64,000 nt of DNA from Macrostomum lignano (taxonomy: Eukaryota), in the NCBI GenBank assembly GCA_002269645.1, contig NIVC01000827.1, forward strand, positions 463,929 through 527,928, read 5' to 3'. Shown one piece after another: positions 9,101 to 63,516 of this stretch (position 1 is the stretch's first letter; each line of letters begins with the position of its first letter). The translations under genes were made by a program, and so were the position numbers. The notes under the pieces were generated by a model. The model was not told where the DNA came from. It searched no databases and worked only from the letters and a program-made list of their open reading frames with translations.

Positions 9101-12100
9101 ACATGAAGGGTATGAGAGTCACGGGAGAGTGGGGTGAGGGTTGCAGACATCAGAATCTCATATGAGAGTCACGGGAGAGTCGGGATGACGATGCAGACAT
9201 CAGATCAAAATCTCATATGAGAGTCACGGTGGTGCAATCAAAATCTCATATGAGAGTCACGGTGGTGCAATCAAAATCTCATATGAGAGTCACGGTGGTG
9301 CAATCAAAATCTCATATGAGAGTCACGGTGGTGCAATCAAAATCTCATATGAGAGTCACGAGTGAAGGCATCAAAATCTCACATAAGAGTCACGGGAGGG
9401 TCATCAAAATCTCATATGAGAGTCACGGAAGGGACATCAAAATCTCATATGAGAGTCACGGGGAGAGGCATCAGAATCTCATATGAGAGTCAAGAGTAGA
9501 GGCATCAGAATCTCATATGAGAGTCACGGGTAGAGGCATCAAAATCTCATATGAAAGCCATGGGTAGAGGCATCAAAATCTCATATGAAAGCCATGGGTA
9601 GAGGCATCAGAATCTCATATGAGAGTCAAGAGTAGAGGCATCAGAATCTCATATGAGAGTCACGGGGAGAGGCATCAAAATCTAATATGAGAGTCACGGT
9701 GTTGCAATCAAAATCTCATATGAGAGTCACGGTGGTACAATCAAAATCTCATATGAGAGTCACGGTGGTGCAATCAAAATCTCATATGAGAGTCACGGGT
9801 AGAGGCATAAAAATCTCATATGAAAGTCACGTGTAGAGGCATCAGAATCTCATACGAGAGGCACCGAGAATATTAGCAATAATTCGAATAAAAATCAAAC
9901 AGAAGCCTTTTTGTACTTTCAGGTTGCCAGATTATCCGTTGTCTTCGGGCACTTTGGCTCATTAAAGACCGTCAATTGATAATTAATGCTAATTTTTCAT
10001 CTCAGATTCCTCCTCTTCGATGAGGATGTGTCAGGATATTTTTAGATAAAAACTTCGCAAATTAAGTGATTTAGCTCGTATGTAAAACTCATAAATCAAC
10101 TGAATACGTGATCTGGAATCCTGCTATTGAAATCAGATGGTTAGATTAGTGAAATTTTATACCATAAGTAGCGAAGAAAGAAATTGGATTATTTCATAAT
10201 TGAGGGCGACAAAACCATGAATAAATCGCTGAGGAGATAGGAGGGTAAGAGAGTAGGAAGAGAAGGAGGAAGGCTTGAAATGAAGGTGGGAAAAGAGAGA
10301 ATGAGGGAGGGAGAGAAGGAGAGAGTGAGAGAGAGGGAGAGAGGGAGAGAGGGAGACAGGGAGACAGGGAGAGAGGAAGACAGGGAGAGGGGGAGAGAGG
10401 GTGAGAGGGAGGGAGAGAGGGAGACAGGGAGACAGGGAGAGAGGAAGACAGGGAGACAGGGAGAGAGGGAGAGAGGGAGAGAGGGAGGTAAGGAGAGAGG
10501 GGGAGAGGGAGAGAGGGAGACATGGAGACAGAGAGAGAGGGAGAGAGGGAGAGAGGGAGAGAGAGGGAGGCAGGGAGACAGGAAGACAGGGAGACAGGGT
10601 GAGAGGGAGAGAGGGAGAGAGGGAGACATGGAGACAGAGAGAGAGGGAGACAGGGAGATAGGGAGAGAGAGGGAGGCAGGGAGACGGGGAGACAGGGAGA
10701 CAGGGAGACAGGGAGACAGGGAGACAGGGAGACAGGGAGACAGGGAGATAGGGAGACAGGGAGACAGGGAGAATAGAGGGACAGAGGGAGACAGGGAGAC
10801 AGGGTGAGAGGGAGACAGGGAGACAGGGAGAGAGGGAGAGAGGAAGACAGGGAGACAGGGAGACAGGGAAAGAGGGAGAGAGGGAGACAAGGAGACAGGG
10901 TGAGAGGGAGACAGGGAGACAGGGAGACAGGGTGAGAGGGAGACAGGGAGACAGGGAGACAGGGTGAGAGGGAGACAGGGAGACAGGGAGACAGGGTGAG
11001 AGGGAGACAGGGAGACAGGGAGACAGGGAGACAGGGAGACAGGGAGAGAGGGACAGAGGGAGAGAGGGAGACAGGGAGACAGGGTGAGAGGGAAGTAGGG
11101 AGACACGGAGACAGGGTGAGAGGGAGACAGGGAGACAGGGTGAGAGGGAAATAGGGAGACAGGGAGACAGGGTGAGAGGGAGACAGGGAGACAGGGAGAG
11201 AGGGAGGGAGACAGGGAGACAGGAAGGGAGGGAGAGAGGGAGATAGGTAGAGAGGGAGAGGGAGAGAGGGAGAGAGGGAGAGAGGGAGACACGGAGAGAG
11301 GAAGAGAGAGAGGGTGAGAAGGAAAGATGGAGAGAAGGAGAGAGGGAGAGAGGGAGACAGGGAGACAGGAAGGGAGGGAGAGAGGGAGATAGGTAGAGAG
11401 GGAGAGGGAGGGAGGGAGAGAGGGAGAGAGGGAGACACGGAGAGAGGAAGAGAGAGAGGGTGAGAAGGAAAGATGGAGAGAGGGAGAGAGAGAGAGAGGG
11501 AGAAAGGGAGAGAGAGAGGGTGAGAAGGAGAGAGGGAGAGAGGGATAGAGAGGGAGACAGGGAGGGAGGGAGAGAGGGAGATAGATAGAAAGGGAGAGGG
11601 AGAGAGGGAGACGGGGAGACAGGGAGACAGGGAGACAGGGAGAGAGGGAGATAGGTAGAGAGGGAGAGGGAGAGAGGGAGAGAGGGAGAGAGGGAGACAC
11701 GGAGAGAGGAAGAGAGAGAGGGTGAGAAGGAAAGATGGAGAGAGGGAGAGAGGGAGAGAGGGAGAAAGGGAGAGAGAGAGGGTGAGAAGGAGAGAGGGAG
11801 AGAGGGATAGAGAGGGAGACAGGGAGGGAGGGAGAGAGGGAGATAGATAGAAAGGGAGAGGGAGAGAGGGAGACAGGGAGACAGGGAGAGAGGAAGACAG
11901 GGAGACAGGGAGAGAGGGAGAGAGGGAGAGAGGGAGGTAAGGAGAGAGGGAGAGAGGGAGAGAGGGAGACATGGAGACAGAGAGAGAGGGAGAGAGGGAG
12001 AGAGGGAGAGAGAGGGAGGCAGGGAGACAGGAAGACAGGGAGACAGGGTGAGAGGGAAATAGGGAGACAGGGAGACAGGGTGAGAGGGAGACAGGGAGAC

Positions 12101-14313
12101 AGGGAGAGAGGGAGGGAGACAGGGAGACAGGAAGGGAGGGAGAGAGGGAGATAGGTAGAGAGGGAGAGGGAGAGAGGGAGAGAGGGAGAGAGGGAGACAC
12201 GGAGAGAGGAAGAGAGAGAGGGTGAGAAGGAAAGATGGAGAGAGGGAGAGAGGGAGAGAGGGAGACAGGGAGACAGGAAGGGAGGGAGAGAGGGAGATAG
12301 GTAGAGAGGGAGAGGGAGGGAGAGAGGGAGAGAGGGAGACACGGAGAGAGGAAGAGAGAGAGGGTGAGAAGGAAAGATGGAGAGAGGGAGAGAGAGAGAG
12401 AGGGAGAAAGGGAGAGAGAGAGGGTGAGAAGGAGAGAGGGAGAGAGGGATAGAGAGGGAGACAGGGAGGGAGGAGAGAGGGAGATAGATAGAAAGGGAGA
12501 GGGAGAGAGGGAGACAGGGAGACAGGGAGAGAGGAAGACAGGGAGACAGGGAGAGAGGGAGAGAGGGAGAGAGGGAGGTAAGGAGAGAGGGAGAGAGGGA
12601 GAGAGGGAGACATGGAGACAGAGAGAGAGGGAGAGAGGGAGAGAGGGAGAGAGAGGGAGGCAGGGAGACAGGAAGACAGGGAGACAGGGTGAGAGGGAGA
12701 GAGGGAGAGAGGGAGACATGGAGACAGAGAGAGAGGGAGACAGGGAGATAGGGAGAGAGAGGGAGGCAGGGAGACGGGGAGACAGGGAGACAGGGAGACA
12801 GGGAGACAGGGAGACAGGGAGACAGGGAGACAGGGAGATAGGGAGACAGGGAGACAGGGAGAATAGAGGGACAGAGGGAGACAGGGAGACAGGGTGAGAG
12901 GGAGACAGGGAGACAGGGAGAGAGGGAGAGAGGAAGACAGGGAGACAGGGAGAGAGGGAGAGAGGAAGACAGGGAGACAGGGAGACAGGGACAGAGGGAG
13001 AGAGGGAGACAAGGAGACAGGGTGAGAGGGAGACAGGGAGACAGGGAGACAGGGTGAGAGGGAGACAGGGAGACAGGGAGACAGGGTGAGAGGGAGACAG
13101 GGAGACAGGGAGACAGGGTGAGAGGGAGACAGGGAGACAGGGAGACAGGGAGACAGGGAGAGAGGGACAGAGGGAGAGAGGGAGACAGGGAGACAGGGTG
13201 AGAGGGAAATAGGGAGACAGGGAGACAGGGTGAGAGGGAGACAGGGAGACAGGGAGAGAGGGAGGGAGACAGGGAGACAGGAAGGGAGGGAGAGAGGGAG
13301 ATAGGTAGAGAGGGAGAGGGAGAGAGGGAGAGAGGGAGAGAGGGAGACACGGAGAGAGGAAGAGAGAGAGGGTGAGAAGGAAAGATGGAGAGAGGGAGAG
13401 AGGGAGAGAGGGAGACAGGGAGACAGGAAGGGAGGGAGAGAGGGAGATAGGTAGAGAGGGAGAGGGAGGGAGGGAGAGAGGGAGAGAGGGAGACACGGAG
13501 AGAGGAAGAGAGAGAGGGTGAGAAGGAAAGATGGAGAGAGGGAGAGAGGGAGAGAGGGAGAAAGGGAGAGAGAGAGGGTGAGAAGGAGAGAGGGAGAGAG
13601 GGATAGAGAGGGAGACAGGGAGGGAGGGAGAGAGGGAGATAGATAGAAAGGGAGAGGGAGAGAGGGAGACGGGGAGACAGGGAGACAGGGAGACAGGGAG
13701 AGAGGGAGATAGGTAGAGAGGGAGAGGGAGAGAGGGAGAACTGCTACAGCAATAACTGTTCATCATTATCACCATTTCACAGCAGGATCAGCTGAAGAGG
13801 ACCGTCAGCAGTTCGGCTGGGATCCCCAGACCGGGTGAAATTTTCCCGAGCATCGCGGCTCCGGCTCGACTGCCACAGGATGGGGCCGAGGTCGATCAAC
13901 TGCTCCTTACTGACTGCTTCGATTCCCAGCATCCATTGCTGCTTTTTATCTTGCCGCCATCGAAGCGGACCCAGCGCGATCATCTAGCAAACTCGGTGTT
14001 GCAAACTTTCTCCAATCGAGTGGACGAATTTACCAACTGTCGCCTGATTGGTCGACTCTGTAGTCATGGTGACACCGAGGAAATCGGTGCGGTAGCTTTT
14101 CCAATACTGGTGGACCTGTCGGGTCGTGTTGATGGAGCCTGCGGACTCGGCGATAACTCGACTGTCTGTGGAATTTTCGCTCTGAGCTGCGTGGATTTTG
14201 GAGGCGACAAGCGGGCGATTCTGCGGTGGTCAGCGCTGTTTGCCGCTGTTGATGGAGCTCCGAAACAGCCTGATGGATGGGTGGAGCTTGCGCTGAAGAT
14301 GCTTTCTGGATGA
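6181..14313 (+). CDS. Two-exon protein: disordered Pro/acidic N-terminus plus C-terminal peroxiredoxin (AhpC/TSA)-fold domain lacking the peroxidatic Cys; join(6181..6669,13783..14313), ~339 aa
   Basis: Exon 1 ends at CCGGAG|gtgaga (phase 0). Acceptor ttcacag|CAG at 13782 is also phase 0. Exon 2 aligns by eye to 2-Cys Prx: PRPGEIFPSIAAPA ~ KIGHPAPNFKATA; FSNRVDEFTNCRLIG ~ FSDRAEEFKKLNCQVIG; FPILVD ~ IPLVSD. The start (6181 or 6271) and possible extra internal exons are uncertain. Confidence 0.6.
6690..7290 (+). repeat. Tandem gagtgagattccca-type repeats (left arm of inverted pair)
   Basis: 14-15-bp units plus a longer ~36-38-bp variant at 6830-7050. Confidence 0.88.
7805..8730 (-). repeat. 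Tandem tgggaatctcactc repeats (right arm, reverse complement of 6690-7290)
   Basis: The unit is the reverse complement of the left-arm unit. Confidence 0.88.
9108..9860. repeat. ~33-bp minisatellite containing the palindrome TCTCATATGAGA
   Basis: atcaaaatctcatatgagagtcacggtggtgca repeated with variants. Confidence 0.9.
10262..13740. repeat. ~3.5-kb polypurine (GA-rich, gggagacag/gggagagag) satellite
   Basis: Almost purely A/G on the + strand with internally duplicated blocks; produces the spurious PLSLSP and ERGREG ORFs. Confidence 0.97.
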
Positions 14314-15744: not shown

Positions 15745-16740
15745 ATGGCCAAGATTCTAATTTGCGGCTTGTGCAACAAAGTGTTTATTGCCGAGGTAAA
15801 TCTGATCGAACATCTCAAAACTCATATACCATTAGCTATGCACGTGGCCTTAGCGGCCAAAAGTGGTAGCTCTTCGAGAAACAATGAAGGTCAACAAAAC
15901 TTCGTCAGTCCTAGCGTGGCTGTCTGCACCATAAAGGTAACTGCTTAATTTTTTAATCACTTACGAGAATTACGACAACCAATAGAATAGGAATCTGATT
16001 AAAGCTTCCGAATTATTTTCAAACACGACACCCAGGTGGAGATTTGCAACGCGTCTCTCTCAGACGGTTCGACGCCCATTAACCAGATCAGCCAGAGACA
16101 AGAACCAGCCGGCTCAGAAAGTCAACAGATGCTCGATCAGCAAACCATTCCGTCTTTACCGCGTCGAATACCAGAGGACGCCATCCAGAGTCGTGAGCCC
16201 TGCCCGACTAGCGACCAAGTGAACGTGCTCCGTCTCCGCCGCTTGGTCGCCGCCAATCGCTACCGACGCAAAGTGGCCTTCGAGTGTCGAGTTTGTCGCC
16301 GACAATTCAACTATCAGACTGCCGCAACGAAGCACGCCAACCACTATCACGCCGCCGCCGCGCATAACCGGCCCAAGCCGTACAACTTTCGCCAGAGCGC
16401 CAACGCTGGTCGCGTCTTGCCAGCAAGACGAATTCAAGAGAAACGCATTGCCGCTAGAAAGCAACCGAAGCAGAATAAAAAAACTTTGCCAAGTCGCGAT
16501 GCGGCCCGGCAGGCGGACTTGGTCGACATGGAGGCGGATGGCAACAACGAGGAGGCCGCATCTGACAACGAAGCCGACCGGTCGTCCAGCCGCGGAAACG
16601 AAATAGTCGCCGAAGAAGATGACGAAGTCGAGATGCAGCCAAGCTCCGCTAGTGCCGACAACCAGGCGACATCGCAGGCGCCTCCCCAATCCGTTGCGTC
16701 TATAATTGAAGCGGCAAGGACCCAGCAACAACAACAACAT

Positions 16741-16772
<32 letters not shown>

Positions 16773-17624
16773 GCAGCAGCAATTTCTGCATCAACAACTG
16801 TTGTTGTCGGCGGTACAAGCTGAACGACAACGACTTCAGATGGCAGTTGCAAGTAGGCAATTTTATTACTGGTACTTTACAGATTTATATATCCTTATTC
16901 AAGCCTTACTGTATCCCCACAAAAATCCCCCACAGCGACGTCCTCTACGGCGCAATTGGGTCAGCCATCGCGGATTCTGCCTTGCCCACACTGTCCGATG
17001 ACTTTCACGGACATTGGCTTCCTGGCCAGGCACGTCCAACTGCACAACGAACTGCAGAAACAGCAACCGCTCCTATTGCAACAGGCGTCGCAGAATTCCA
17101 CGCAGCCGTCGCAGTCAGCCTTCGGTTCAATTCCAATTCCGGGTGGTTCGATTCCTGTTTCTGTAGCGCCCTGGTTGACCCCAGCCAGACTGGCTCCAGC
17201 TTCCTCCTCTCAGCAGCAGCAGCCGCAGGCCAAAGGACCAGCACCTGCTGCACCAACAACCAAAACGCAGCTCGTTAGTCGGCCAACCCCACTTCTACCG
17301 CCAATGCCATCGCATTCGCAAGCTCTGCTAATGAGTCGGCCGGCAGGACCTGGACTTCTGCGGCCGAGGCAGCCGTTGCCGATACCATTCACAGCGCTGA
17401 CCGGTCTGCAGCAGCAGCAACAGCAACAGAAACTTCCAGCGGGATTCCTTCCTGCCAACTTCATCTATGGCGGCGTTCCCGCTAATAACCTGGCAGCTCA
17501 GCGTGCTCTGCAGCAGACGCAACTGACTCAGCAGTCGTTGCCAATGCGCCTCATGCCGAGTATTCGACCGCAGCCGATTCTGGCAGCTCGAGATCATACC
17601 GCCGCTCCATCTTCGTCCAAATGA
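15745..17624 (+). CDS. C2H2 zinc-finger protein with three dispersed fingers and polyQ tracts; join(15745..15936,16036..16852,16936..17624), 565 aa
   Basis: Fingers CGLCNKVFIAEVNLIEHLKTH, CRVCRRQFNYQTAATKHANHYH and CPHCPMTFTDIGFLARHVQLH. Two short GT-AG introns with matching phases 0 and 1; total 1698 nt. Confidence 0.85.
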
Positions 17625-42835: not shown

Positions 42836-44389
42836 ATGAAAGCTACGGCGCACAATGAGCAGATTGAAAATGAGACTGAGGAGCAGCAGCAACTGCAGCA
42901 GCAATTGACCAGCAGCAGCAATGATCAGTCACCGTGTCTGTCAGCATCGACAGAATCTGTCCACTCAACGGGCTCAAGAGGTGTCCCCGAATGTCGAATT
43001 TGTCGCAGTTCATCAACGGAGCTTCGCCGAGTTGGCGACAAGCTTCACCGGGTTAAATGCGCCTGCACTGGCAGCCTGGAGCACCTGTGCGCCCAGTGCT
43101 ACCAGCGCTATTACCTGGAACAGGAGTTGGAAAGGGGAGACATTTGAGAACTGATTTTGATCAACTTGCTGGGAATTGAGCCTTTTGTCTGCTGCCTTCC
43201 CAGCTGCCTTCCCAGCTCCCTTTCCTGCTGTCTTCCTTACTGCTTTCCCAGCTGACTTCGCATCTGTCTTACCAGCTACCTGATCTCAGCTATCTTTCTG
43301 CAGTAGCTTTCCCAGCTGTTTTCCCAGCTGTCTTACCGGCTGTTTTCCCAGCTGTCTTACTGGCTGTTTTCCCAGCTGTCTTACCGGCTGTTTTCCCAAC
43401 TGTCTTATCAGCTGTTTTCCCAACTGTCTTATCAGCTGTTTTCTTAGCTGTCTTACCGGCTGTTTCCCAGCTGTCTTACCAGCTGCTTTCCCAGCTGTAT
43501 TACCAGCTGCTGCTTTCCCAGCTGTCTTACCAGCTGCTTTCCCAGCTGTCTTACCAGCTGCTTTCCCAGCTGTCTTACCAGCTGCTGCTTTCCCAGCTGT
43601 CTTACCATCTGTTTTCCTAGCTGTCTTACCAGCTGTTTTCCTAGCTGTCTTACCAGCTGTTTCCCAGCTGTCTTACCAGCTGTTTCCCAGCTGTCTTACC
43701 AGCTGATTTCCCAGCTGACTTACCAGCTGCCTTCTCTGCATTCCTGGTAATCTTCGAGGATGGCCCAACAACTGAGGATCTGTGGGAGGCTATCTTTCTC
43801 AAGCAGCCTGCAGCTCTATAAACAGCCTCCACTTCCAAGACCCTGTCTCTCTTGCAGATGCGAAATCTGTCGCCAGCCGATCGACATCGAGGAGAGCAAC
43901 CTCGCGGCCAGGGCTCTGCTGAAGCTCCGACTTCGCTGCCGCCCCAGTTCCTCGTCGTCTGACGGGTCCCACAGAAGTCGACGCAACGACAGCGGCTGCA
44001 TTGAGGGCCGCTTCCTGGCTTACGCCTGCTTCGTTCTAATAGTCTTTGTCGTAGTCTTTATCATATTCTTTGTCGTTGGGGAGAAGCTTCAGCAGCGAAG
44101 GCGCCTCAGGCAGCTGGCGGCACCCGGAGGAGTTGATGATGAAGCCTCGACAGCCGCCACAACGGCGCCGACGAGACCGATATCGGATTCTGAGCGCCGA
44201 GTTGAAGCTGTGGTGTTCGCCGCGGTGGCCTGCATCAACGTGGCCATCGCGTTGATGTACATGGCCTGGCGGAGTTGCGGCAGCTGCGAGCGGCGCCGTC
44301 GACACCACAGTCAGTTTCCACAACAGCGGTCAGGTGACCGCGACGTGGAGGCTGTTGAGCGAATTGCTAACGAAAATCTAAGGGCTTGA
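42836..44389 (+). CDS. MARCH-family RING-CH (RINGv) membrane E3 ubiquitin ligase-like protein; join(42836..43143 or ..43125, 43858..44389)
   Basis: CRIC...CACTGSLEHLCAQC in exon 1, CEIC at the start of exon 2 (acceptor cttgcag at 43857), followed by two hydrophobic TM segments. The exon 1 donor is ambiguous. Confidence 0.72.
43190..43735. repeat. CAGCTG-rich intronic minisatellite (cagctgtcttaccagctgctttcc)
   Basis: Degenerate tandem units inside the MARCH-like intron. Confidence 0.88.
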
Positions 44390-44697: not shown

Positions 44698-45283
44698 CTT
44701 GTCTATCAGCACAAATACCTCACTATAACATTTATGTACATTAATGTATATCTTGTCTAAGCAAATTTATATAACTTTGCATTATTCAATAACAATAAGT
44801 ATTTTCATGTACATTTTTCTAGTTTTATGTAATTAGCACTTTTAACAGTTTTTCTCATTTAAACTTTAAAAGGGTTTTGTAATTTGTATTCAAAATCTGT
44901 ACATAAAGCTAAAGCATTACTTGTTTATCTTGCTCAGTAGTAACATTGCCATTTCTTCCAGTATAACAAAAGCGATTTGTTGTTGTATTTCGTCTCCTAA
45001 CAAACAGTTGACTTTATCTGATCAGCTATCGATATTTCTTTATCTATCATTTTTTCTACTGTAACAAAAAAGCCAAGTTTTTTATGTCGAAATAAATAAA
45101 AAAGAGCCGAAAATATTGCTTTTTGTTTTAATAATGCAGCACGTCAAAAAGTTGTTGATATTGAATGAAAAATAAACCCTCTCGTTGGATAAACTTGTTT
45201 TAATTGGTTAAACATTTCATCCTCTCAATCCAGTTCACATCCAATAGGTCATTTAAGGTCACCGAATAGAATCGTTATCAAAA

Positions 45284-48200
45284 TTAGCAGAGGACCGATT
45301 TGCCCCGACGATTGGTTGCCATGGCAACCAGGGCAGCGCCGCCGGCAATTCCAAATTGGGCGACGTCCGCCGAGTAGCTGCAAGATGAAACCGGGTGCTT
45401 AAATTATTCGGTGCCTGCATGCGTATTTCTAGATTTGTTGAAGCAGTTCGATCAAAATTTTATTAGACATCCCGTCTCAATTCCAGCCTTAGAAGATAAG
45501 GATGAGATACAGGAGCCTATTCAGAATAACAGCTATGAGCGTTCCTGAAACTCATGATATATCAGCATTCCTGAATCTCATATATGAAGATTCCTGATTC
45601 TCATATATCTGAATTTCTGAATCTCCTATATCAGAATATGAAACATTCCCGAATCTTTTATATTACCATTCCTGAATCCCATATATATGAGCATTCCTGA
45701 ATCTCACCTATGAGCATTCCTGAATCTCACCTATGAGCATTCCTGAATCTCACCTATGAGCATTCCTGAATCTCACCTATGAGCATTCCTGAATCTCACC
45801 TATGAGCATTCCTGAATCCCACCTATGCGCATTCCTGAATCTCACCTATGAGCGTTCCTGAATCTCACCTATGAGCGTTCTTGAATCTCACCTATGAGCA
45901 TTCCTGAATCTCACCTATGCGCATCCCTAAATCTCACCCTACAAGATACAATGAAACCCACCTCGAAACAGCTCCCACAGCTGAGCCAATCTGCCACAGA
46001 ATCTTCTTTTGGAGCGAAGCGCTCGGCACTTGACGGGTCAGTTCGTCGGAGGCCAGCAAAGTGGACAAGGTCTTGTCGAAATTGACGGTCGGCTGACTCG
46101 GTAGCGACACAGTCTGATGATCAGGTTTGTCAAGTGAGATGAGTCGAGAGCTGTTAAGAACGGAGGGCTCTTCAATAACGACGTCGAACTTAGTGCTGGA
46201 TGATTTTGTGCTGAGCACCGGCTGGGAGCCAAAATTGGTAATGCGCTTTGACTGCTTGGACAAATGGACTCGCTCCGCAGCCATAGTCAGGCGTCGGTCG
46301 TTCGACACGGAACGACGTTCTCGTGACAGCCGTCGATCCATCGACACAACGCGACGCTCAGCAGCTCTAGTCAGACGTCGGTCAGTCGACACAGCGCGAC
46401 GCTCAGCAGCTCTAGTCAGACGTCGGTCAGTCGACACAGCGCGACGCTCAGCAGCTCTAGTCAGACGTCGGTCAGTCGACACAGCGCGACGCTCAGCAGC
46501 CCTAGTCAGACGCTGGTCAGTCGACACGGAACGACGCTCTCGTGACAGCCGTCGGTCAGTCGACACAGCGCGACGCTCAGCAGCTCTAGTCAGACGTCGG
46601 TCAGTCGACACAGCGCGACGCTCAGCAGCTCTAGTCAGACGTCGGTCAGTCGACACAGCTCGACGCTCAGCAGCCCTAGTCAGACGTCGGTTGTTCGACA
46701 CGGAACGACGCTCTCGTGACAGCCGTCGGTCCATCGACACAACGCGACGCTCAGCAGCTCTAGTCAGACGTCGGTCGTTCGACACGGAACGACGCTCTCG
46801 TGACAGCCGTCGGTCCATCGACACAGCGCGAGGCTCAGCAGCTCTAGTCAGACGTTGGTCAGTCGACACGGAACGACGCTCTCGTGACAGCCGTCGGTCA
46901 GTCGACACAGCGCGACGCTCAGCAGCCCAAGTCAGGCGTCGGTCATTCGACACGGAACGACGCTCTCGTGGCAGCCTTCGGTCAGTCGACACAGCGCGAC
47001 GCTCAGCAGCTCTAGTCAGACGTCGGTCGTTCGACACGGAACGATGCTCTCGTGACAGCCGTCGGTCCATCGACACAACGCGACGCTCAGCAGCTCTAGT
47101 CAGACGTCGGTCAGTCGACACAGCGCGACGCACAGAAGCCCTAGAGAGGCGTCGGTCGTTCGACACGGAACGACGCTTAGAAGCTCTAGTCAGCCGTCGG
47201 TCAGTCGTCACAGCGCGACGCTCAGCAGCTCTAGTCAGGCGTCGGTCGTTCGACACGGAACGACGCTCTCGTGACAGCCGTCGGTCAGTCGACACAGCGC
47301 GACGCTCAGCAGCTCTAGTCAGACGTCGGTCGTTCGACACGGAACGACGCTCTCGTGACAGCCGTCGGTCCATCGACACAGCGCGACGCTCAGCAGCTCT
47401 AGTCAGACGTCGGTCAGTCGACACAACGCGACGCTCAGCAGCTCTAGTCAGACGTCGGTCAGTCGACACAGCGCGACGCTCAGCAGCTCTAGTCAGACGT
47501 CGGTCAGTCGACACAGCGCGACGCTCAGTAGCTCTAGTCAGGCGTCGGTCGTTCGACACGGAACGACGCTCTCGTGACAGCCGTCGGTCAGTCGACACAG
47601 CGCGACGCTCAGCAGCTCTAGTCAGACGTCGGTCGTTCGACACGGAACGACGCTCTCGTGACAGCCGTCGGTCAGTCGACACAGCGCGACGCTCAGCAGC
47701 TCTAGTCAGACGTCGGTCAGTCGGCACAGCGCGACGCTCAGCAGCTCTAGTCAGACGTCGGTCAGTCGACACAACGCGACGCTCAGCAGCTCTAGTCAGA
47801 CGTCGGTCGTTCGACACGGAACGAGGCTCTCGTGACAGCTGTCGGTCAGTCGACACAGCGCGACGCTCAGCAGCTCTAGTCAGACGTCGGTCAGTCGTCA
47901 CAGCGCGACGCTCAGCAGCTCTAGTCAGACGTCGGTCAGTCGACACAGCGCGACGCTCAGTAGCTCTAGTCAGGCGTCGGTCGTTCGACACGGAACGACG
48001 CTCTCGTGACAGCCGTCGGTCAGTCGACACAGCGCGACGCTCAGCAGCTCTAGTCAGACGTCGGTCAGTCGACACAGCGCGACGCTCAGCAGCTCTAGTC
48101 AGACGTCGGTCAGTCGACACAACGCGACGCTCAGCAGCTCTAGTCAGACGTCGGTCGTTCGACACGGAACGACGCTCTCGTGACAGCCGTCGGTCCATCG

Positions 48201-49833
48201 ACACAGCGCGACGCTCAGCAGCTCTAGTCAGACGTCGGTCAGTCGACACTGCGCGACGCTCAGAAGCTCTAGTCAGACGTCGGTCGTTCGACACGGAACG
48301 AGGCTCTCGTGACAGCCGTCGGTCAGTCGACACAGCGCGACGCTTAGCAGCTCTAGTCAGACGTCGGTCAGTCGACACAGCTCGACGCTCAGCAGCCCTA
48401 GTCAGACGTCGGTCGTTCGACACGGAACGACGCTCTCGTGACAGCCGTCGGTCAGTCGACACAGCGCGACGCTCAGCAGCTCTAGTCAGACGTCGGTCAG
48501 TCGACACAGCGCGACGCACAGAAGCCCTAGAGAGGCGTCGGTCGTTCGACACGGAACGACGCTTAGAAGCTCTAGTCAGCCGTCGGTCAGTCGTCACAGC
48601 GCGACGCTCAGCAGCTCTAGTCAGGCGTCGGTCGTTCGACACGGAACGACGCTCTCGTGACAGCCGTCGGTCAGTCGACACAGCGCGACGCTCAGCAGCT
48701 CTAGTCAGACGTCGGTCGTTCGACACGGAACGACGCTCTCGTGACAGCCGTCGGTCCATCGACACAGCGCGACGCTCAGCAGCTCTAGTCAGACGTCGGT
48801 CAGTCGACACAGCGCGACGCTCAGCAGCTCTAGTCAGACGTCGGTCAGTCGACACAACTTGACGCTCAGAAGCTCTAGTCAGACGTCGGTCGTTCGACAC
48901 GGAACGAGGCTCTCGTGACAGCTGTCGGTCAGTCGACACAGCGCGACGCTCAGCAGCTCTAGTCAGACGTCGGTCAGTCGTCACAGCGCGACGCTCAGCA
49001 GCTCTAGTCAGACGTCGGTCAGTCGACACAGCGCGACGCTCAGTAGCTCTAGTCAGACGTCGGTCGTTCGACACGGAACGACGCTCTCGTGACAGCCGTC
49101 GGTCAGTCGACACAGCGCGACGCTCAGCAGCTCTAGTCAGACGTCGGTCAGTCGACACAGCGCGACGCTCAGCAGCTCTAGTCAGACGTCGGTCAGTCGA
49201 CACAACGCGACGCTCAGCAGCTCTAGTCAGACGTCGGTCGTTCGACACGGAACGACGCTCTCGTGACAGCCGTCGGTCCATCGACACAGCGCGACGCTCA
49301 GCAGCTCTAGTCAGACGTCGGTCAGTCGACACTGCGCGACGCTCAGAAGCTCTAGTCAGACGTCGGTCGTTCGACACGGAACGAGGCTCTCGTGACAGCC
49401 GTCGGTCAGTCGACACAGCTCGACGCTCAGCAGCCCTAGTCAGACGTCGGTCGTTCGACACGGAACGACGCTCTCGTGACAGCCGTCGGTCAGTCGACAC
49501 AGCGCGACGCTCAGCAGCTCTAGTCAGACGTCGGTCAGTCGACACAGCGCGACGCTCAGAAGCTCTAGTCATTCGTCGGTCGTTCGACACGGAACGACGC
49601 TCTCGTGACAGTTGACTGCTCTGTGGGAGCCGTCGCACATCAACTCTTGACTGACGAGCGTCATTCACTACCGAAGTCTTCCCGACATCCAACACAGAGA
49701 TGCGGCTGCCCGGCTGTGGTCCAGCAGGAGCGGCATCTCCGGCGTTAACTCCGACTTCAGCGATGTGACAGTCGATTGTCTTCCTGGTCATGAAGACCAG
49801 AGTAATCAACAGCAGCAGCTTGACGTCCACCAT
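45284..49833 (-). CDS. Secreted Arg-rich tandem-repeat protein; complement(join(49833..45962,45377..45284)), ~1321 aa
   Basis: Signal-peptide-like MVDVKLLLLITLVFMTRKTIDC; roughly 75-80 units of RRAVSTDRRLTRAAE / RRSVSNDRRLTRAAE / RRAVSTDRRLSRE; unique flanks on both sides of the repeat. Donor tcgag|gtgggt at 45961 (phase 2) fits acceptor tttcatcttgcag at 45378; the last exon is less certain. Confidence 0.75.
45540..45930. repeat. 23-bp intronic minisatellite (attcctgaatctcacctatgagc)
   Basis: Tandem units in the last intron of the Arg-rich gene. Confidence 0.9.
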
Positions 49834-51065
49834 CTGGAAGTGGAGAAAAGTTTGAGAAAATTTGACAGCTTTTAGATTAGTATTGCAAAAAAGCATGTTT
49901 TTCGAATATTTAATCCCTTTAGCATTTATCAATTTCTTAGCCAAGATACATGTACCGTCCCGGGAAAATTTCTGATCGAACAGTGCAAATTCGAACAAAA
50001 TCGGTCAAGCCATTCAGGAGAAAATCGATTTCGTACAAACAAACAACTCATTTTTAGTACATAGGAAAAAGGTAGTTTTGCAGGAAGGTTGCTGGATCAG
50101 AGGATCCAGCTTTAGTGGGCACCTTAGGCTTGATAGGCATATATAGTATTTTCACTAGGCCTCTTGGACGACAACTGGTCTGAAGTTTGTATACAATACT
50201 TGCCTGGCGATGAGAAAGTATCCGCATGCGTTATGTACGAGTATCAGTGTCTCCGCTTGCCTATACTTGCTGGCTCCGGGTCAATTTTAGGCAAGGGTTG
50301 GCAAACTCCCGCGCGTGAAGGTTTTTTCGCTCAAGTCTGGTCTCTTCTCAGCTCTCTTCTTTCTTCTACTCTCCTCCCCTCTTTTCTCTCCATCTCCTCT
50401 CTCCCTTCTCCCTTTTCTCTTCTTTCCTCTCCTAGCCCGCAGTCATTCGCAAGATTCGATATATTTCAATATTCAAATGATGAGGACGCACTTTTTCCCA
50501 AATCCCGCGCTAGCACATGGGCTCTAAACTTACTTGCCTACTAACAGTGGGCAGTGGGCATTTTTATCCTTTTTCTGCGAATTTTCATAGAATCTATACT
50601 AGATATAATGTCTGGCCATACTAGTAGTCATAATAACATAGGCGCAGCTTTTTGGGTCATAAATCATCGCTTTCGAAGCTGATCTGACAGCCACCTGCGC
50701 CTCACTCAGTGTTGAAGCGGGCGCCAGATGGTCTGAGAGGATGCGGGCGGTAGCTTTTTTCTCATCATTTTGACAGGCCATCAAGATTTATGAGGTCAGA
50801 GCCTATTGTTCGGATTCACTCAAGCGTGTGACAGCTTTGACAGCTATGCGTTTTACCCCTAAAAGTACCTTGGGATTAGCGATTAGCGATTTCTCTTCAT
50901 TATCTTCACTTTCTATTTAATAAGAGCTTTCTAATGTATATTTTTTCATTAATTTCTGTCAATCCTACGCGAAAAGTCATAAATCATTTTGTTGCGATTT
51001 TGAGTGATTTATGGCCGCACCTGTCATCTTTTTACGACCCTGTGGGAACTGATAGGATCTCTCGG

Positions 51066-54764: not shown

Positions 54765-61433
<6,669 letters not shown>

Positions 61434-61888: not shown

Positions 61889-63516
61889 TTACTGACTCAG
61901 ACGCGGATCTTTGGTTGGTGGACGCTTAGGTGTAGGCGACGGCGACGGAGCAAACGCAATGAAGCCATCGGAGTGCTTGTACTGCTCGGCATTGTCATAG
62001 TTAATCCGATGCAGATGGCCTGAACTGGTTGAATCTGTCCCCATTGACCTCAGACTGTTGAGACGGCCGCCCATGGCTTCTAGGATAGCCTGGCCAGCGC
62101 ATAGATCCCATTTTTTTATCGGACCCGCGTGGAGATAGTTGTCAGCTAATCCCTGAATGAACAACCAAGTGGGGATTTTAGTAGTATATTAGTATATTTA
62201 GATTAATAACCTATGAATATATGAAACACTCTCAAATTTTTAAGACACCCGAATGGCTCATGTCGATTACAAGACTACAGATACAATGCAAAATTCATTC
62301 TAAAAAACCGTCAGCGGATGCTGAGATGCTGAATGACTCACATGAAGTTTATAAAATACAAAATGACTTATAGGGAATTGCTATGATTCCAAACGGCTCA
62401 TGGGGAATCGTTAGGATGCCAAGTGGCTCATGGGGAATCGCTAGGATGCCAAGTGGCTCATGGGGAATCGCTAGGATGCCAAGTGGCTCATGGGGAATCG
62501 CTGGGATGCCAAGTGGCTCATGGGGAATCGCCCTGATACCAAGTGGCTCATGGGGAATCGCTAGGATGCCAAGTAGCTCATGGGGAATCGCTGGGATGCC
62601 AAGTGGCTCATGGGGAATCGCTAAGATGCCAAGTGGCTCATGGGGAATCGCCCTGATACCAAGTGGCTCATGGGGAATCGCTAGGATGCCAATTGGCTCA
62701 TGGGGAATCGCTAGGATGCAATCGCCAAGTGGCTCATGGAGAATCGCTAGGATGCCAAGTGGCTCATGGGGAATCGCTAGGATTCCAAGTGGCTCATGGG
62801 GAATCGCTAGGATGCAATCGCCAAGTGGCTCATGGGGAATCGCTAGGATGCAATCGCCAAGTGGCTCATGGGGAATCGCTAGGATGCAATCGCCAAGTGG
62901 CTCATGGAGAATCGCTAGGATGCAATCGCCAAGTGGCTCATGGGGAATCGCTAGGATGCAATCGCCAAGTGGCTCATGGGGAATCGCTAGGATGCAATCG
63001 CCAAGTGGCTCACGGGGAATCGCTGTGATACCAGAGTTTCTAAAGAAGTGTTTAGACACCAAGACTTATAGAAAACGGCTTGTCACGCGGTGCAAGCCTA
63101 AAGTGGTTAAACTGCACAATCCTCCGAAGAGGGACACACACTAGTCTACATATACTACATGTAAAATTTCCAAACTTTTTTCTTACCTTACTAAGCAGCA
63201 GTAGTTTATAACCCGCCCCGGCAGCCGATAACAAGTCGACGGACTCGTTAGGGAACAATTTTCTAGCCGTGCTATTCAATTGAGCGCCCCGATGACTGCG
63301 CGAAATCAGCACCCGCCTTCGTCGGTGACTCTTATCGGCGGCGCCTTTGATGTGTGAGTCCGATTTTAATACGTGCTTATCCAGCACAATAGGTAAATTT
63401 AATTGCTCTTTTAGACTGTCGGATACGCGAGAATTGCGCCAAGCCCAATAGGTTTTATTAGCGAATGGAAAATGCAGCACGCCTAGCAGGGGTGTGCCTC
63501 GGTAGGCCACGCACAC
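61889..63516 (-). CDS. BPNT2: Golgi-resident PAP 3'-phosphatase (IMPAD1/gPAPP), last two exons; complement(join(63516..63187,62152..61889)), 5' part lies outside the window
   Basis: VCVAYRGTPLLGVLHFPF, VLISRSH, AAGAGYKLL and IKKWDLCAGQAILEAMGG match the IMPAD1 motifs; GT-AG phase 0 intron. Confidence 0.88.
62375..63030. repeat. 30/36-bp intronic minisatellite (gccaagtggctcatggggaatcgctaggat)
   Basis: In the IMPAD1 intron; gives the spurious IPHEPLG ORFs. Confidence 0.93.

What the first reader, a model, noticed from the sequence alone, without database searches (positions are those of the whole stretch)
45284..49833. Giant secreted polycation: signal peptide plus ~1100 aa of RR-punctuated repeats
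Seen: a signal-like N-terminus and 13/15-aa units with five Arg and two acidic residues each (about one third Arg, net +3 per unit). There is an RR pair roughly every 6-8 residues, no Cys or aromatic residue in the standard units, and a unique C-terminus with a hydrophobic stretch. Established: dibasic RR sites are prohormone convertase targets, and flatworm adhesive proteins include K/R-rich repetitive regions. Inference: either a polyprotein releasing many short peptides (AVSTD, SVSND, LTRAAE, LSRE) or an uncleaved glue/mucus/gland-granule protein, possibly Ser/Thr phosphorylated. I do not recognise it.
Basis: partly seen in the sequence, partly recalled or inferred. Interest (0 to 1): 0.7.

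Follow-up and report, generated by a model that had tools for sequence, protein, structure and literature searches.

The report
Arginine-rich secreted repeat protein gene, flatworm
This is a real, transcribed, two-exon gene of the flatworm Macrostomum lignano that encodes a 1,321-residue protein with a signal-like start, about 1,100 residues of arginine-rich 13/15-residue repeats and a hydrophobic tail; it has no relatives outside the species and its function has not been tested.

Summary
On the minus strand an ATG at 49833 opens exon 1, which ends at 45962. A GT-AG intron runs 45961-45378, and exon 2 ends at a TAA (45286-45284). The product is 1,321 aa: a signal-like N-terminus, then 77 units (53 x RRLTRAAERRAVSTD, 24 x RRLSRERRSVSND; 34% Arg, net +3 per unit), a unique 112-aa region and a hydrophobic stretch.

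The window is Macrostomum lignano DNA, and 38% of it is minisatellite, so open frames across arrays are common here. This array is the only one whose frame stays open for more than 130 codons on both sides. RNA-seq-derived GenBank models (BOX15_Mlig000613g1/g3/g4) cover both ends and use the same splice junction. Variants among units are enriched for synonymous changes only in this frame (p=0.006).

No Pfam domain was found, and no homologue outside M. lignano. It is not the adhesive protein Mlig-ap1. Published positional RNA-seq shows dilution from head fragment to whole worm, so it is not tail-, testis- or ovary-specific.

AlphaFold2 predicts the repeat as one continuous helix with an Arg-rich face. 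The 13-aa units carry 19 canonical furin-type RERR|S motifs.

Best reading: a secretory-pathway polycation that binds polyanions, either intact or after limited cleavage. Dicing at every RR into pentapeptides is unlikely.

The parts
45284..49833 (-). Whole coding region of the two-exon gene: 1,321 aa, about 154 kDa, net charge +235
   Evidence: partial GenBank and UniProt models of other copies
49834..49849 (-). Polypyrimidine tract plus CAG directly upstream of the ATG (ttttctccacttccag|ATG). Candidate spliced-leader trans-splice acceptor. This is an inference.
   Evidence: Sequence. The transcript-derived model P0001 starts at this ATG and not at the in-frame upstream ATG at 49899. 38.8% of M. 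lignano genes are trans-spliced (PMC5730564).
49768..49833 (-). Signal-peptide-like N-terminus MVDVKLLLLITLVFMTRKTIDC, with a possible cleavage site after Cys22
   Evidence: Hydropathy. Heuristic only; no SignalP was available.
45962..49833 (-). Exon 1 (3,872 nt), ending at a GAG|GTGGGT donor
   Evidence: the junction GAVS|SYSAD is present in P0003, P0043 and (frameshifted) P0002
46297..49617 (-). Repeat array of 77 units (53 x 45 nt coding RRLTRAAERRAVSTD, 24 x 39 nt coding RRLSRERRSVSND). It is organised in higher-order LLS (129 nt) and LLLS (174 nt) blocks and carries 19 RERR|S furin-type motifs.
   Evidence: AlphaFold2 helix prediction
45962..46296 (-). Unique Ser/Thr/Pro-containing C-terminal region in exon 1 (about 112 aa). 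No domain match; predicted mostly disordered with short helices.
45378..45961 (-). GT-AG intron (584 nt), mostly a 23-nt minisatellite (45542-45938)
45284..45377 (-). Exon 2: the last 30 codons plus TAA
45314..45364 (-). Hydrophobic stretch VAQFGIAGGAALVAMAT, a candidate membrane anchor. It is followed by NRRGKSVLC here and by a different, frame-shifted tail in other copies.
45199..45204 (-). ATTAAA, a candidate polyadenylation signal about 80 nt after the stop codon
   Evidence: Sequence. This is an inference.
46127..48862 (+). Antisense 911-aa ORF. It is a by-product of the stop-free repeat and is not considered a gene.
   Evidence: It has two stops inside the array, no support from the flanks, and no excess of synonymous variants.

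Best explanation
This is a lineage-restricted protein-coding gene of Macrostomum lignano. The mRNA is probably spliced-leader trans-spliced just before the ATG and has one intron.

The encoded protein enters the secretory pathway through an N-terminal signal peptide. It carries about 1,100 residues of Arg-rich 13/15-residue repeats and ends in a unique region plus a hydrophobic segment. That segment would tether it, at least at first, as a type I membrane protein with a very short tail.

The repeat most likely forms a long, highly cationic helical rod. Within each unit, 4 of the 5 Arg fall in a 100-degree arc, the acidic residues flank that arc, and Ala/Leu/Thr/Ser lie on the opposite face.

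I propose that the protein works electrostatically. It would bind or condense polyanions such as sulfated or acidic glycans of mucus or glycocalyx, granule contents, or microbial surfaces. It would do so in secretory cells of the anterior body, either intact or after limited furin-type cleavage at the RERR|S motifs of the 13-aa units.

Shown: gene structure, transcription, composition, the frame-specific excess of synonymous variants, absence of homologues, and the absence of tail or gonad enrichment.

Inferred: the signal peptide, membrane topology, helix, polyanion binding, any cleavage, and the cell type.
For: Gene and frame:
- The exon/intron model fits canonical signals.
- This is the only array of 28 in the window whose ORF extends more than 130 codons on both sides.
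- RNA-seq-derived GenBank models BOX15_Mlig000613g1 (5' end) and g3/g4 (3' end, with the identical exon junction) exist at the syntenic copies. The Mlig_3_7 annotation is transcript-based (PMC5730564).

Protein-level constraint:
- Of 56 distinct unit variants, 27 are synonymous against 31% expected (p=0.006). None of the other five frames is significant.
- The 15-aa and 13-aa consensus units keep all five Arg, although three of the Arg codons differ (CGT/CGG, AGA/CGA, CGC/CGT). Their length difference is exactly 6 nt.
- All 77 units are exactly 39 or 45 nt.
- There are no indels in the 551 nt of unique exon-1 coding sequence between the window and L001.

Secretory and polycationic character: hydropathy, net charge +235 and calculated pI 12.

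Helix: AlphaFold2 predicts residues 2-154 of the query as one helix at pLDDT 94-97. The local Arg moment peaks at 99-100 degrees per residue.

Expression:
- Counts A/B/C/D are 551/271/246/168 (g3), 761/475/416/338 (g4) and 2749/1652/1575/1254 (g13).
- This is a fall of 1.6-2.1 log2 from head fragment to whole worm. The gene is classed Non-Specific: not testis, ovary or tail.

Precedent: in the same species the cationic regions of Mlig-ap1 act by binding negatively charged sugars (PMC6410801).

Furin-type motifs: 19 RERR|S, all in 13-aa units.
Against: - There is no direct evidence of translation, secretion or binding.
- No signal-peptide or transmembrane predictor could be run. The hydrophobic stretch is only 17 residues and Gly/Ala-rich in the window copy.
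- The tail after the hydrophobic stretch differs by frame-shifting 1-nt differences among copies.
- Between the window and L001, the unique coding parts differ by 6 non-synonymous changes and only 1 synonymous change. This points to weak or no purifying selection there.
- dN/dS among units is only about 0.5.
- The helix comes from a single-sequence AlphaFold2 run, which tends to over-predict long helices in charged low-complexity sequence. The units also contain V, S, T and D, and they lack the i/i+4 ion pairs of true single alpha-helices.
- The positional RNA-seq is unreplicated and unstranded and used 36-nt reads. Its authors read a decline with fragment size as a dilution effect. The identity of transcript g13 with this gene was not verified.
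- No full-length transcript spanning the array is on record.
Confidence: 0.45

Rival explanations
1. Limited-processing polyprotein. The 13-aa units act as furin-type linkers (RERR|S). The precursor is cut in the Golgi or granules into about 20 cationic amphipathic helical peptides of 28-116 aa (net +6 to +21). These are released from anterior gland cells, for example as antimicrobial or mucus- or prey-acting agents.
For: - There are 19 canonical R-X-R-R|S motifs. All lie in 13-aa units, spaced by the LLS/LLLS higher-order blocks.
- The 15-aa units have only A-E-R-R and T-D-R-R, which lack a P4 Arg.
- The helix is predicted to have an Arg-rich face.
- The gene is well expressed and not gonadal.
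Against: - Predicted fragment sizes are heterogeneous: 28, 43, 58, 71, 73, 86, 101 and 116 aa.
- 5 of 24 linker units have lost the P2 Arg (REPR or REHR) with no sign of purging.
- There is no acidic pro-region to neutralise the cargo.
- The neutral face (Ala, Leu, Thr, Ser) is weakly hydrophobic, and the hydrophobic moment at 100 degrees is low.
- No peptide data exist.
Confidence: 0.15
2. Prohormone-like polyprotein. The protein is cleaved at every RR pair and trimmed by a carboxypeptidase. This releases more than 150 copies of AVSTD, LTRAAE, SVSND and LSRE as signalling peptides.
For: - The repeat holds 142 RR pairs, spaced 6-8 residues apart, behind a signal-like peptide.
- Head-biased expression would fit neurons of the brain.
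Against: - There is no Gly anywhere in the repeat, so no amidation donor.
- The products would be 4-6 residues long, acidic and varied.
- A scale of 154 sites and 1,321 aa, with a C-terminal membrane-anchor-like segment, is unlike the multi-copy neuropeptide precursors I know of (my own knowledge).
- Half of the RR sites are followed by Leu.
- The region is predicted to be a continuous helix, not an exposed linker.
- Constraint falls on the Arg residues themselves.
Confidence: 0.05
3. A transcribed but functionless or very young ORF. A 39/45-nt minisatellite that happens to lack stops expanded inside a transcribed locus of a genome full of such arrays. The 'protein' is made poorly or not at all and has no selected function.
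For: - 38% of the window is minisatellite, and 9 of 28 arrays have open frames across them.
- The antisense frame is also largely open.
- No homologue exists outside the species.
- Unique regions show 6 non-synonymous changes to 1 synonymous between copies, and the C-terminal tail varies.
- The array evolves by recent internal duplication: 574 nt with 4 mismatches at an offset of 1,083 nt.
Against: - The flanking open frame, ATG, signal-like peptide and in-frame canonical splice are not expected by chance.
- The excess of synonymous variants is specific to the sense frame.
- Arg is kept through codon changes between the two unit types.
- Read counts are above those of most transcripts on the sampled page of the table.
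Confidence: 0.2
4. Not secreted. The N-terminal hydrophobic segment is not a functional signal, and the Arg/Ser-rich repeat acts inside the cell as a nucleic-acid-binding or condensate-forming protein, like protamine or SR-type proteins.
For: The sequence is one third Arg with many Ser/Thr and 71 RRx[S/T] kinase-type motifs. Arg-rich repeats commonly bind RNA or DNA (general knowledge).
Against: - The start has a clear n-region, a 10-residue h-region and a polar c-region.
- There are no RS dipeptide runs.
- It is not enriched in the testis region, so a protamine-like role is unlikely.
- The second hydrophobic segment at the C-terminus fits a membrane or secretory protein.
Confidence: 0.08

Closest known systems
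Mlig-ap1, adhesive protein 1 of Macrostomum lignano (Wunderer et al. 2019, PMC6410801): KR-regions A-C
   Same: Same species. Both are very large secreted proteins dominated by extremely cationic repeats. For Mlig-ap1 the demonstrated mode of action is electrostatic binding of negatively charged sugars. This is the best functional analogy.
   Different: - No sequence similarity: it did not appear in either protein search.
- Mlig-ap1 repeats are rich in Lys, Arg and Pro (e.g. SRKPRRKNRKSRKP), whereas this repeat has only 3 Lys in about 1,100 aa.
- Mlig-ap1 has C-type lectin, vWD, C8, TIL and EGF domains and 11% Cys in its domain region. This protein has no domain and no Cys in the repeat.
- Mlig-ap1 is expressed in tail adhesive glands, whereas this gene is not tail-enriched.
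Membrane-tethered mucins (architecture only)
   Same: Signal peptide, then a long tandem-repeat ectodomain with many Ser/Thr (21% here), then a single hydrophobic anchor and a very short tail. Repeat number varies between copies (a 3.3-kb array in the window against 3.0 kb in L001).
   Different: There are almost no Pro residues. One third of the repeat is Arg, and it is predicted helical rather than extended. There is no SEA or other juxtamembrane domain and no homology.
Multi-copy peptide precursors cut at dibasic sites (FMRFamide-type neuropeptide precursors; apidaecin-type antimicrobial polyproteins)
   Same: Signal peptide followed by tandem short units bounded by RR. The 13-aa units carry canonical RERR|S furin-type sites.
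   Different: There is no Gly for amidation. The units between RR pairs are 4-6 acidic residues. Cleavage at every RR would destroy the cationic character. It has 77 units and a C-terminal anchor, and no homology.
Single alpha-helix (ER/K) domains and trichohyalin-like charged helical repeats
   Same: A charged, low-complexity repeat predicted as one uninterrupted helix more than 150 residues long. If the whole array were helical it would be about 165 nm long (1,107 x 0.15 nm).
   Different: Those proteins are intracellular, close to neutral, and stabilised by i/i+4 Glu-Arg/Lys pairs. Here the ratio of basic to acidic residues is 5:2, Glu8 and Asp15 have no basic partner at i+/-4 (only R5-E8 at i+3), and the protein has a signal-like peptide.
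Protamines and Arg-rich sperm nuclear basic proteins
   Same: About one third Arg, interspersed with Ser/Thr that could be phosphorylated.
   Different: This protein is 1,321 aa with a signal-like peptide and regular acidic residues, and it is not enriched in the testis region.

Membership tests
Protein-coding gene (as opposed to an accidental ORF in a minisatellite) | The reading frame extends well beyond the repeat on both sides and has start, stop and splice signals | tested here: met
   The frame stays open 134 and 131 codons beyond the array. This is unique among the 28 arrays in the window.
Protein-coding gene (as opposed to an accidental ORF in a minisatellite) | Transcription on the proposed strand, with the proposed splice | tested here: met
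   Transcript-derived GenBank models g1, g3 and g4 at syntenic copies carry the junction GAVS|SYSAD (annotation method). The evidence comes from other copies and assemblies, not from this exact sequence. No full-length transcript is known.
Protein-coding gene (as opposed to an accidental ORF in a minisatellite) | Purifying selection in the proposed frame | tested here: inconclusive
   Repeat variants are 27 synonymous to 29 non-synonymous against 31% synonymous expected (p=0.006). This holds only in the sense frame. Unique regions, however, show 6 non-synonymous to 1 synonymous change between copies.
Classical secreted or type I membrane protein | Cleavable N-terminal signal peptide | not testable with these tools
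   Only a heuristic is available: K5, a 10-residue hydrophobic core, and I-D-C|H at positions -3 to -1. No SignalP-type predictor was available.
Classical secreted or type I membrane protein | A C-terminal transmembrane helix of about 20 hydrophobic residues | tested here: inconclusive
   The window copy has 17 Gly/Ala-rich residues (19-aa Kyte-Doolittle 1.32). The P0003 and P0002 versions extend this to about 21 residues (…AMATIVGA).
Flatworm adhesive protein Mlig-ap1 | Sequence homology, Lys/Arg-rich KR-regions, and lectin/vWD/TIL/EGF domains | tested here: not met
   It did not appear in either search. There is no Pfam domain. The repeat has only 3 Lys.
Flatworm adhesive protein Mlig-ap1 | Expression in adhesive gland cells of the tail plate | tested here: not met
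   Positional RNA-seq gives class Non-Specific. The change from C to D (adding the tail) is negative for g3, g4 and g13.
Neuropeptide or prohormone polyprotein | Repeated bioactive peptides flanked by dibasic sites, typically with a C-terminal Gly for amidation | tested here: not met
   Dibasic sites are present (142 RR), but the repeat contains no Gly, and the segments between sites are 4-6 acidic residues.
Furin-type proprotein convertase substrate | An R-X-[K/R]-R motif in an accessible region, with demonstrated cleavage | tested here: inconclusive
   The motif is present 19 times, as RERR|S. Accessibility is doubtful because the region is predicted helical. Cleavage cannot be tested here.
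Single alpha-helix (ER/K) domain | Dense i/i+4 oppositely charged pairs, near-neutral net charge, and a stable isolated helix | tested here: not met
   Net charge is +3 per unit. Glu8 and Asp15 have no basic residue at i+/-4 (unit sequence). A helix is predicted, but the defining charge pattern is absent.

The most novel reading that the evidence does not exclude
The two unit types have different jobs. The 15-aa units build a cationic amphipathic helix. The 13-aa units are furin-type cutting points (RERR|S). On this reading the gene is a membrane-anchored polyprotein that anterior gland cells process into about 20 strongly cationic helical peptides (28-116 aa, +6 to +21). That would be an unrecognised flatworm effector class for antimicrobial defence, prey handling or mucus control.

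Alternatively the array stays intact as a cell-surface polycationic single helix about 165 nm long. I know of no extracellular precedent for that.
Probability: 0.12. Interest if true: 0.65.

Novelty: new member of a known kind. Interest (0 to 1): 0.4.

Why it matters
Orphan, repeat-rich secreted proteins underlie much flatworm-specific biology, including adhesion, mucus, seminal fluid and rhabdite-type secretions. Short-read transcriptomes and earlier assemblies fragment them.

Here the public annotation holds only 165-204-aa fragments labelled 'hypothetical protein'. One UniRef label reads 'kinesin motor domain-containing', which looks like a mis-annotation. This window gives the first uninterrupted view of the 1,321-aa product.

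A second giant polycation in M. lignano, unrelated in sequence to Mlig-ap1 and not expressed in the tail, would show that charge-based extracellular chemistry is used beyond the adhesive organ.

The case is also a useful calibration. In a genome this rich in minisatellites, a long ORF across an array means nothing by itself. The checks that separated this gene from the spurious 1,000-aa ORFs elsewhere in the same window were flank extension, splice junctions, frame-specific synonymous excess and transcript models.

Tried and rejected
- Exact-product look-up of the window ORF and of P0002 found nothing on record.
- Pfam on a condensed version of the protein gave only sub-threshold noise.
- The exhaustive phmmer search returned 41 hits. 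Everything beyond the three M. lignano entries is an unrelated repeat protein that matches only the repeat part of the query at 20-55% identity (e.g. TDxRI/QQAEK, PTQVSTDEITTR, AERRAPS repeats). I rejected these as compositional or periodic matches.
- Literature searches for the gene ID in main texts and for peptide or DNA strings of the repeat found nothing. The ID was absent from the supplements of PMC5816591, PMC5730564 and PMC12732829.
- ORF openness and absence of stops in the repeat do not count as evidence of coding. Only about 4% of possible single changes create a stop, so about 56 variants without a stop is unremarkable. Other arrays are open too.
- The frameshifts in L001 (-1 and -2, net -3) do not count as evidence of pseudogenisation. 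L002, from the same assembly, changes frame at least 8 times in 1.2 kb at a contig end while its unique 3' part is intact, so assembly error is the simpler reading.
- The idea of a straight Arg stripe along the helix does not hold. The mean unit length of 14.38 aa equals 4 turns of 3.59 residues. However, the phase jumps +60 degrees per 15-aa unit and -140 degrees per 13-aa unit, and the global moments are low. I note it only as a curiosity.
- No fold search was run on the AlphaFold2 model, because a single long helix gives meaningless matches.

Full report
**1. What is in the sequence**

The window is eukaryotic DNA packed with minisatellites. Tandem Repeats Finder returns 106 rows. Arrays of at least 300 bp cover about 24.5 kb of the 64 kb.

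- Frames: between 45934 and 49998 the minus strand has a 1,354-codon open frame. A six-frame stop map shows this is the only frame with no stop between 45936 and 50007. One antisense frame is open for 911 codons but has stops at 48860 and 49613.
The ATG is at 49833, directly after ttttctccacttccag. Exon 1 ends at 45962 (GAG|gtgggt). The intron is 45961-45378 and ends catcttgcag. Exon 2 is 45377-45284 and ends in TAA.
- Product: 1,321 aa, about 154 kDa, net charge +235.

**2. The repeat**

Splitting the protein at each RR-L/M boundary gives 77 units: 53 of exactly 15 aa (consensus RRLTRAAERRAVSTD) and 24 of exactly 13 aa (RRLSRERRSVSND). No other unit length occurs.

- Order: the units run mostly LLS or LLLS, which explains the 129-, 174- and 303-nt periods found by TRF.
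- Composition: the 1,055 residues analysed are 33.6% Arg, 12.6% Ala and 21% Ser+Thr. They have no Cys, Phe, Tyr, Gly or Ile and only 3 Lys.
- RR spacing: RR pairs recur at 7, 8 or 6 residues.
- Recent growth: a 574-nt block recurs 1,083 nt away with 4 mismatches, so the array grows by recent internal duplication.

**3. Is it more than chance?**

In this window an open frame across an array is ordinary. Nine of 28 arrays have at least one, and the (GAGAGAGG)n array at 10295-13739 gives three ORFs of about 1,000 aa.

Three things distinguish this array.

- (i) Flanks. Its frame continues 134 codons upstream and 131 codons downstream of the array. No other array has long extensions on both sides; the best is 22 and 24 codons.
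- (ii) Signals. The flanks supply an ATG, a signal-like peptide, a canonical GT-AG intron that keeps the frame, and a stop codon followed about 80 nt later by ATTAAA.
- (iii) Variants. Among 56 distinct single-base variants of the units (window plus the L001 copy), 27 are synonymous in the sense frame against 31% expected (binomial p=0.006). None of the other five frames shows an excess (window alone 19:22).

In addition, the two unit types differ by exactly 6 nt. They keep all five Arg although three Arg codons differ (CGT/CGG, AGA/CGA, CGC/CGT). The three amino-acid differences are conservative: T/S, A/S and T/N. That pattern points to constraint on the peptide, not on the DNA.

The absence of stops is not informative in itself, because only about 4% of possible changes would create one.

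**4. Organism, other copies and transcripts**

A protein search with a condensed query found only two proteins among 5.8 billion clusters, both from Macrostomum lignano.

- P0001 is BOX15_Mlig000613g1, partial: the N-terminus plus the first repeats.
- P0002 is A0A1I8FC25: the C-terminus, garbled by frameshifts.

An exhaustive phmmer search of 1.84 billion representatives, using ten repeats plus the unique C-terminal region, added two more entries.

- P0003 is BOX15_Mlig000613g4.
- P0004 is A0A1I8FIM9.
- The cluster look-up added P0043, which is BOX15_Mlig000613g3.
- P0003 and P0043 contain the junction …GAVS|SYSAD…, which is the splice proposed above.

The GenBank annotation of assembly Mlig_3_7 is built only from RNA-seq transcripts (StringTie/TACO/TBONE, strand-filtered, with ORFs called by TransDecoder; PMC5730564). 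The locus is therefore transcribed and spliced on this strand.

The models are fragments because the ORF is interrupted in that assembly.

- L001 (NIVC01003160.1) is a syntenic copy. Its array is 3.0 kb, with a 1-nt and a 2-nt deletion 520 nt apart.
- L002 (NIVC01003432.1) ends inside the array and changes frame at least 8 times in 1.2 kb, with unit spacings of 37, 44, 46 and 47 nt.
- The unique 3' part of L002 is intact, so these shifts are most simply PacBio consensus errors. They cannot be used as the 'frame-breaking indels among haplotypes' test.

**5. Comparison of copies**

Window against L001:

- The N-terminal unique coding part has 2 differences in 216 nt. The C-terminal unique part of exon 1 has 5 in 335 nt. 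Neither has indels. The upstream 830 nt has 23 substitutions and 28 indels.
- Six of the seven coding differences are non-synonymous. Constraint on the unique parts is therefore weak, or the gene is evolving fast.
- Exon 2 is the least stable part. Three versions of the tail follow the hydrophobic stretch: …AMATNRRGKSVLC (window, P0004), …AMATIVGANRSSANFDNDSIR (P0003, P0002) and …AMATIVGQIGPLANFDNDSIR (P0043). They differ by 1-nt changes in short homopolymer runs.
- The hydrophobic segment is kept in all versions, and it is longer (about 21 residues) in the second and third.

**6. What kind of protein**

- No Pfam family matches, and nothing outside M. lignano is related.
- The N-terminus (MVDVK, LLLLITLVFM, TRKTIDC|H) has the layout of a signal peptide. 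The only other hydrophobic stretch is VAQFGIAGGAALVAMAT, near the C-terminus. No dedicated predictor was available.
- AlphaFold2, run on a single sequence, models the repeat part of a 245-aa piece as one uninterrupted helix (residues 2-154, pLDDT 94-97). The unique region is mostly low-confidence. Such predictions are generous to charged low-complexity sequence.
- The local Arg periodicity does peak at 99-100 degrees per residue, and 4 of the 5 Arg in a unit fall within a 100-degree arc. Glu and Asp lie at the edge of that arc, and Ala/Leu/Thr/Ser lie opposite it.
- The charge pattern of true ER/K single helices is absent.
- The repeat holds 71 RRx[S/T] and 94 Sx[E/D] motifs. The whole protein has one N-glycosylation sequon, which lies outside the repeat.
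- Only the 13-aa units contain a canonical furin-type motif, RERR|S (19 sites). Cutting there would give fragments of 28-116 aa with net charge +6 to +21.

**7. Expression**

Table S8 of Brand et al. 2020 re-analyses the positional RNA-seq of Arbore et al. 2015. It lists three transcripts of the cluster.

| Transcript | Head (A) | +testis region (B) | +ovary region (C) | Whole worm (D) |
|---|---|---|---|---|
| Mlig000613.g3 | 551 | 271 | 246 | 168 |
| Mlig000613.g4 | 761 | 475 | 416 | 338 |
| Mlig000613.g13 | 2749 | 1652 | 1575 | 1254 |

- All three are classed 'Non-Specific' (fragment definitions).
- Normalised expression falls by 2.1, 1.6 and 1.6 log2 units from A to D. That is a larger fall than for any of the well-expressed transcripts on the sampled page, which range from about +1.05 to -1.3.
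- A transcript largely confined to the head region would dilute in this way. The gene is certainly not enriched in the testis, ovary or tail regions.
- This argues against adhesive organs, prostate or seminal fluid, cement glands and germline.
- Caveats: the libraries are single, unreplicated and unstranded, with 36-nt reads. The original authors treat declines with fragment size as a dilution effect rather than a real difference between samples. I verified that g3 and g4 are this gene, but not g13.
- The gene shows no significant response to social group size, and the table lists no neoblast or germline flag for these transcripts.

**8. Interpretation**

The best-supported reading is a species- or genus-restricted gene for a secretory-pathway polycation. 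I propose that it binds polyanions through a long Arg-faced helical repeat. This is functionally analogous to the KR-regions of Mlig-ap1, which act through negatively charged sugars (PMC6410801). It is not a member of that family, and it is used in the anterior body.

- Intact or processed: the sequence cannot decide whether it stays intact and membrane-tethered or is cut at the RERR|S sites.
- Full dicing at every RR is unlikely. There is no Gly, the products would be very short and acidic, the repeat is predicted helical, and the protein has a C-terminal anchor.
- A functionless young ORF remains a serious rival (about 0.2), given the orphan status and weak constraint on the unique regions.
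- From memory only: flatworm rhabdite and rhammite secretions are acidophilic, meaning basic protein, and rhammite gland bodies lie in the head. This is a lead for in situ work, not evidence.

**9. Verdict**

- The gene exists in public annotation only as 'hypothetical protein' fragments. The full architecture, the furin-type motifs in the 13-aa units, the helix prediction and the non-tail expression are new descriptive points.
- It is a new member of a known kind: a lineage-specific, repeat-rich secreted polycation.
- Interest is moderate.

Noticed in passing
window 1-64000: Minisatellite density is extreme. TRF gives 106 rows, and arrays of at least 300 bp cover about 24.5 kb (38%) of the window. 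The genome-wide figure reported for M. lignano is 15% simple and tandem repeats (PMC5730564). Periods are mostly not multiples of 3 (14, 16, 20, 22, 23, 26, 34 nt).
   Followed up: partly
window 10295-13739: A 3.4-kb purine-rich (GAGAGAGG)n array with very strong GC and AT skew. On the minus strand it yields three overlapping Ser/Leu/Pro-rich ORFs of 951-1,193 aa with no flank support. This is a clear example of a spurious giant ORF in the same window.
   Followed up: partly
window 55949-56476 (-) and 58995-59912 (-): Two genes of GPI-anchor biosynthesis lie about 2.5 kb apart on the same strand: a GWT1/PIG-W exon (Pfam E=2e-22) and a PIG-L exon (GlcNAc-PI de-N-acetylase, E=1.7e-15). Tetranucleotide arrays ((GTCT)n/(CAGA)n) separate them. 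Whether they form one trans-spliced transcriptional unit was not checked.
   Followed up: partly
window 45542-45938 (intron of the gene); L001 12592-12797: The intron is mostly a 23-nt minisatellite whose unit contains AGGTGAGA, a consensus-like 5' splice site repeated about 17 times. The array is about 400 nt in the window but only 9 copies (about 206 nt) in L001, so intron length varies between copies.
   Followed up: partly
window 45314-45315 and 45284-45320: One C of a CC run is absent in three other database versions of the gene. This switches the last residues from NRRGKSVLC* to IVGANRSSANFDNDSIR* and lengthens the hydrophobic segment to about 21 residues. A third version has two further compensating 1-nt changes. 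Whether these are real variants or assembly errors is undecided.
   Followed up: partly
window 46127-48862 (+): The antisense strand of the array encodes a 911-aa ORF that is also Arg-rich (RRRSVDTARRSAALV…), because CGN codons read as NCG in reverse. It has two stops inside the array and no excess of synonymous variants.
   Followed up: yes
protein P0004 (UniRef100_A0A1I8FIM9): This C-terminal fragment of the gene is labelled 'Kinesin motor domain-containing protein' in UniRef. Nothing in the sequence supports that name; it looks like a mis-annotation.
   Followed up: no
window 63052-63516 (-); 16036-17624 (+); 43760-44389 (+): Other probable exons or genes:
- An inositol-monophosphatase-family fragment, below Pfam threshold (E=1.7e-4).
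- A polyQ-containing ORF pair with C2H2-like motifs and no Pfam hit.
- A 209-aa ORF with two hydrophobic segments just downstream of the gene on the opposite strand, with only weak TM-type Pfam noise.
   Followed up: partly
window 46297-49617: The mean unit length (14.38 aa) equals four alpha-helical turns of 3.59 residues. The LLS (43 aa) and LLLS (58 aa) blocks equal 11.9 and 16.1 turns. This may be coincidence. The phase wobbles by +60 or -140 degrees per unit, so no straight Arg stripe results.
   Followed up: partly
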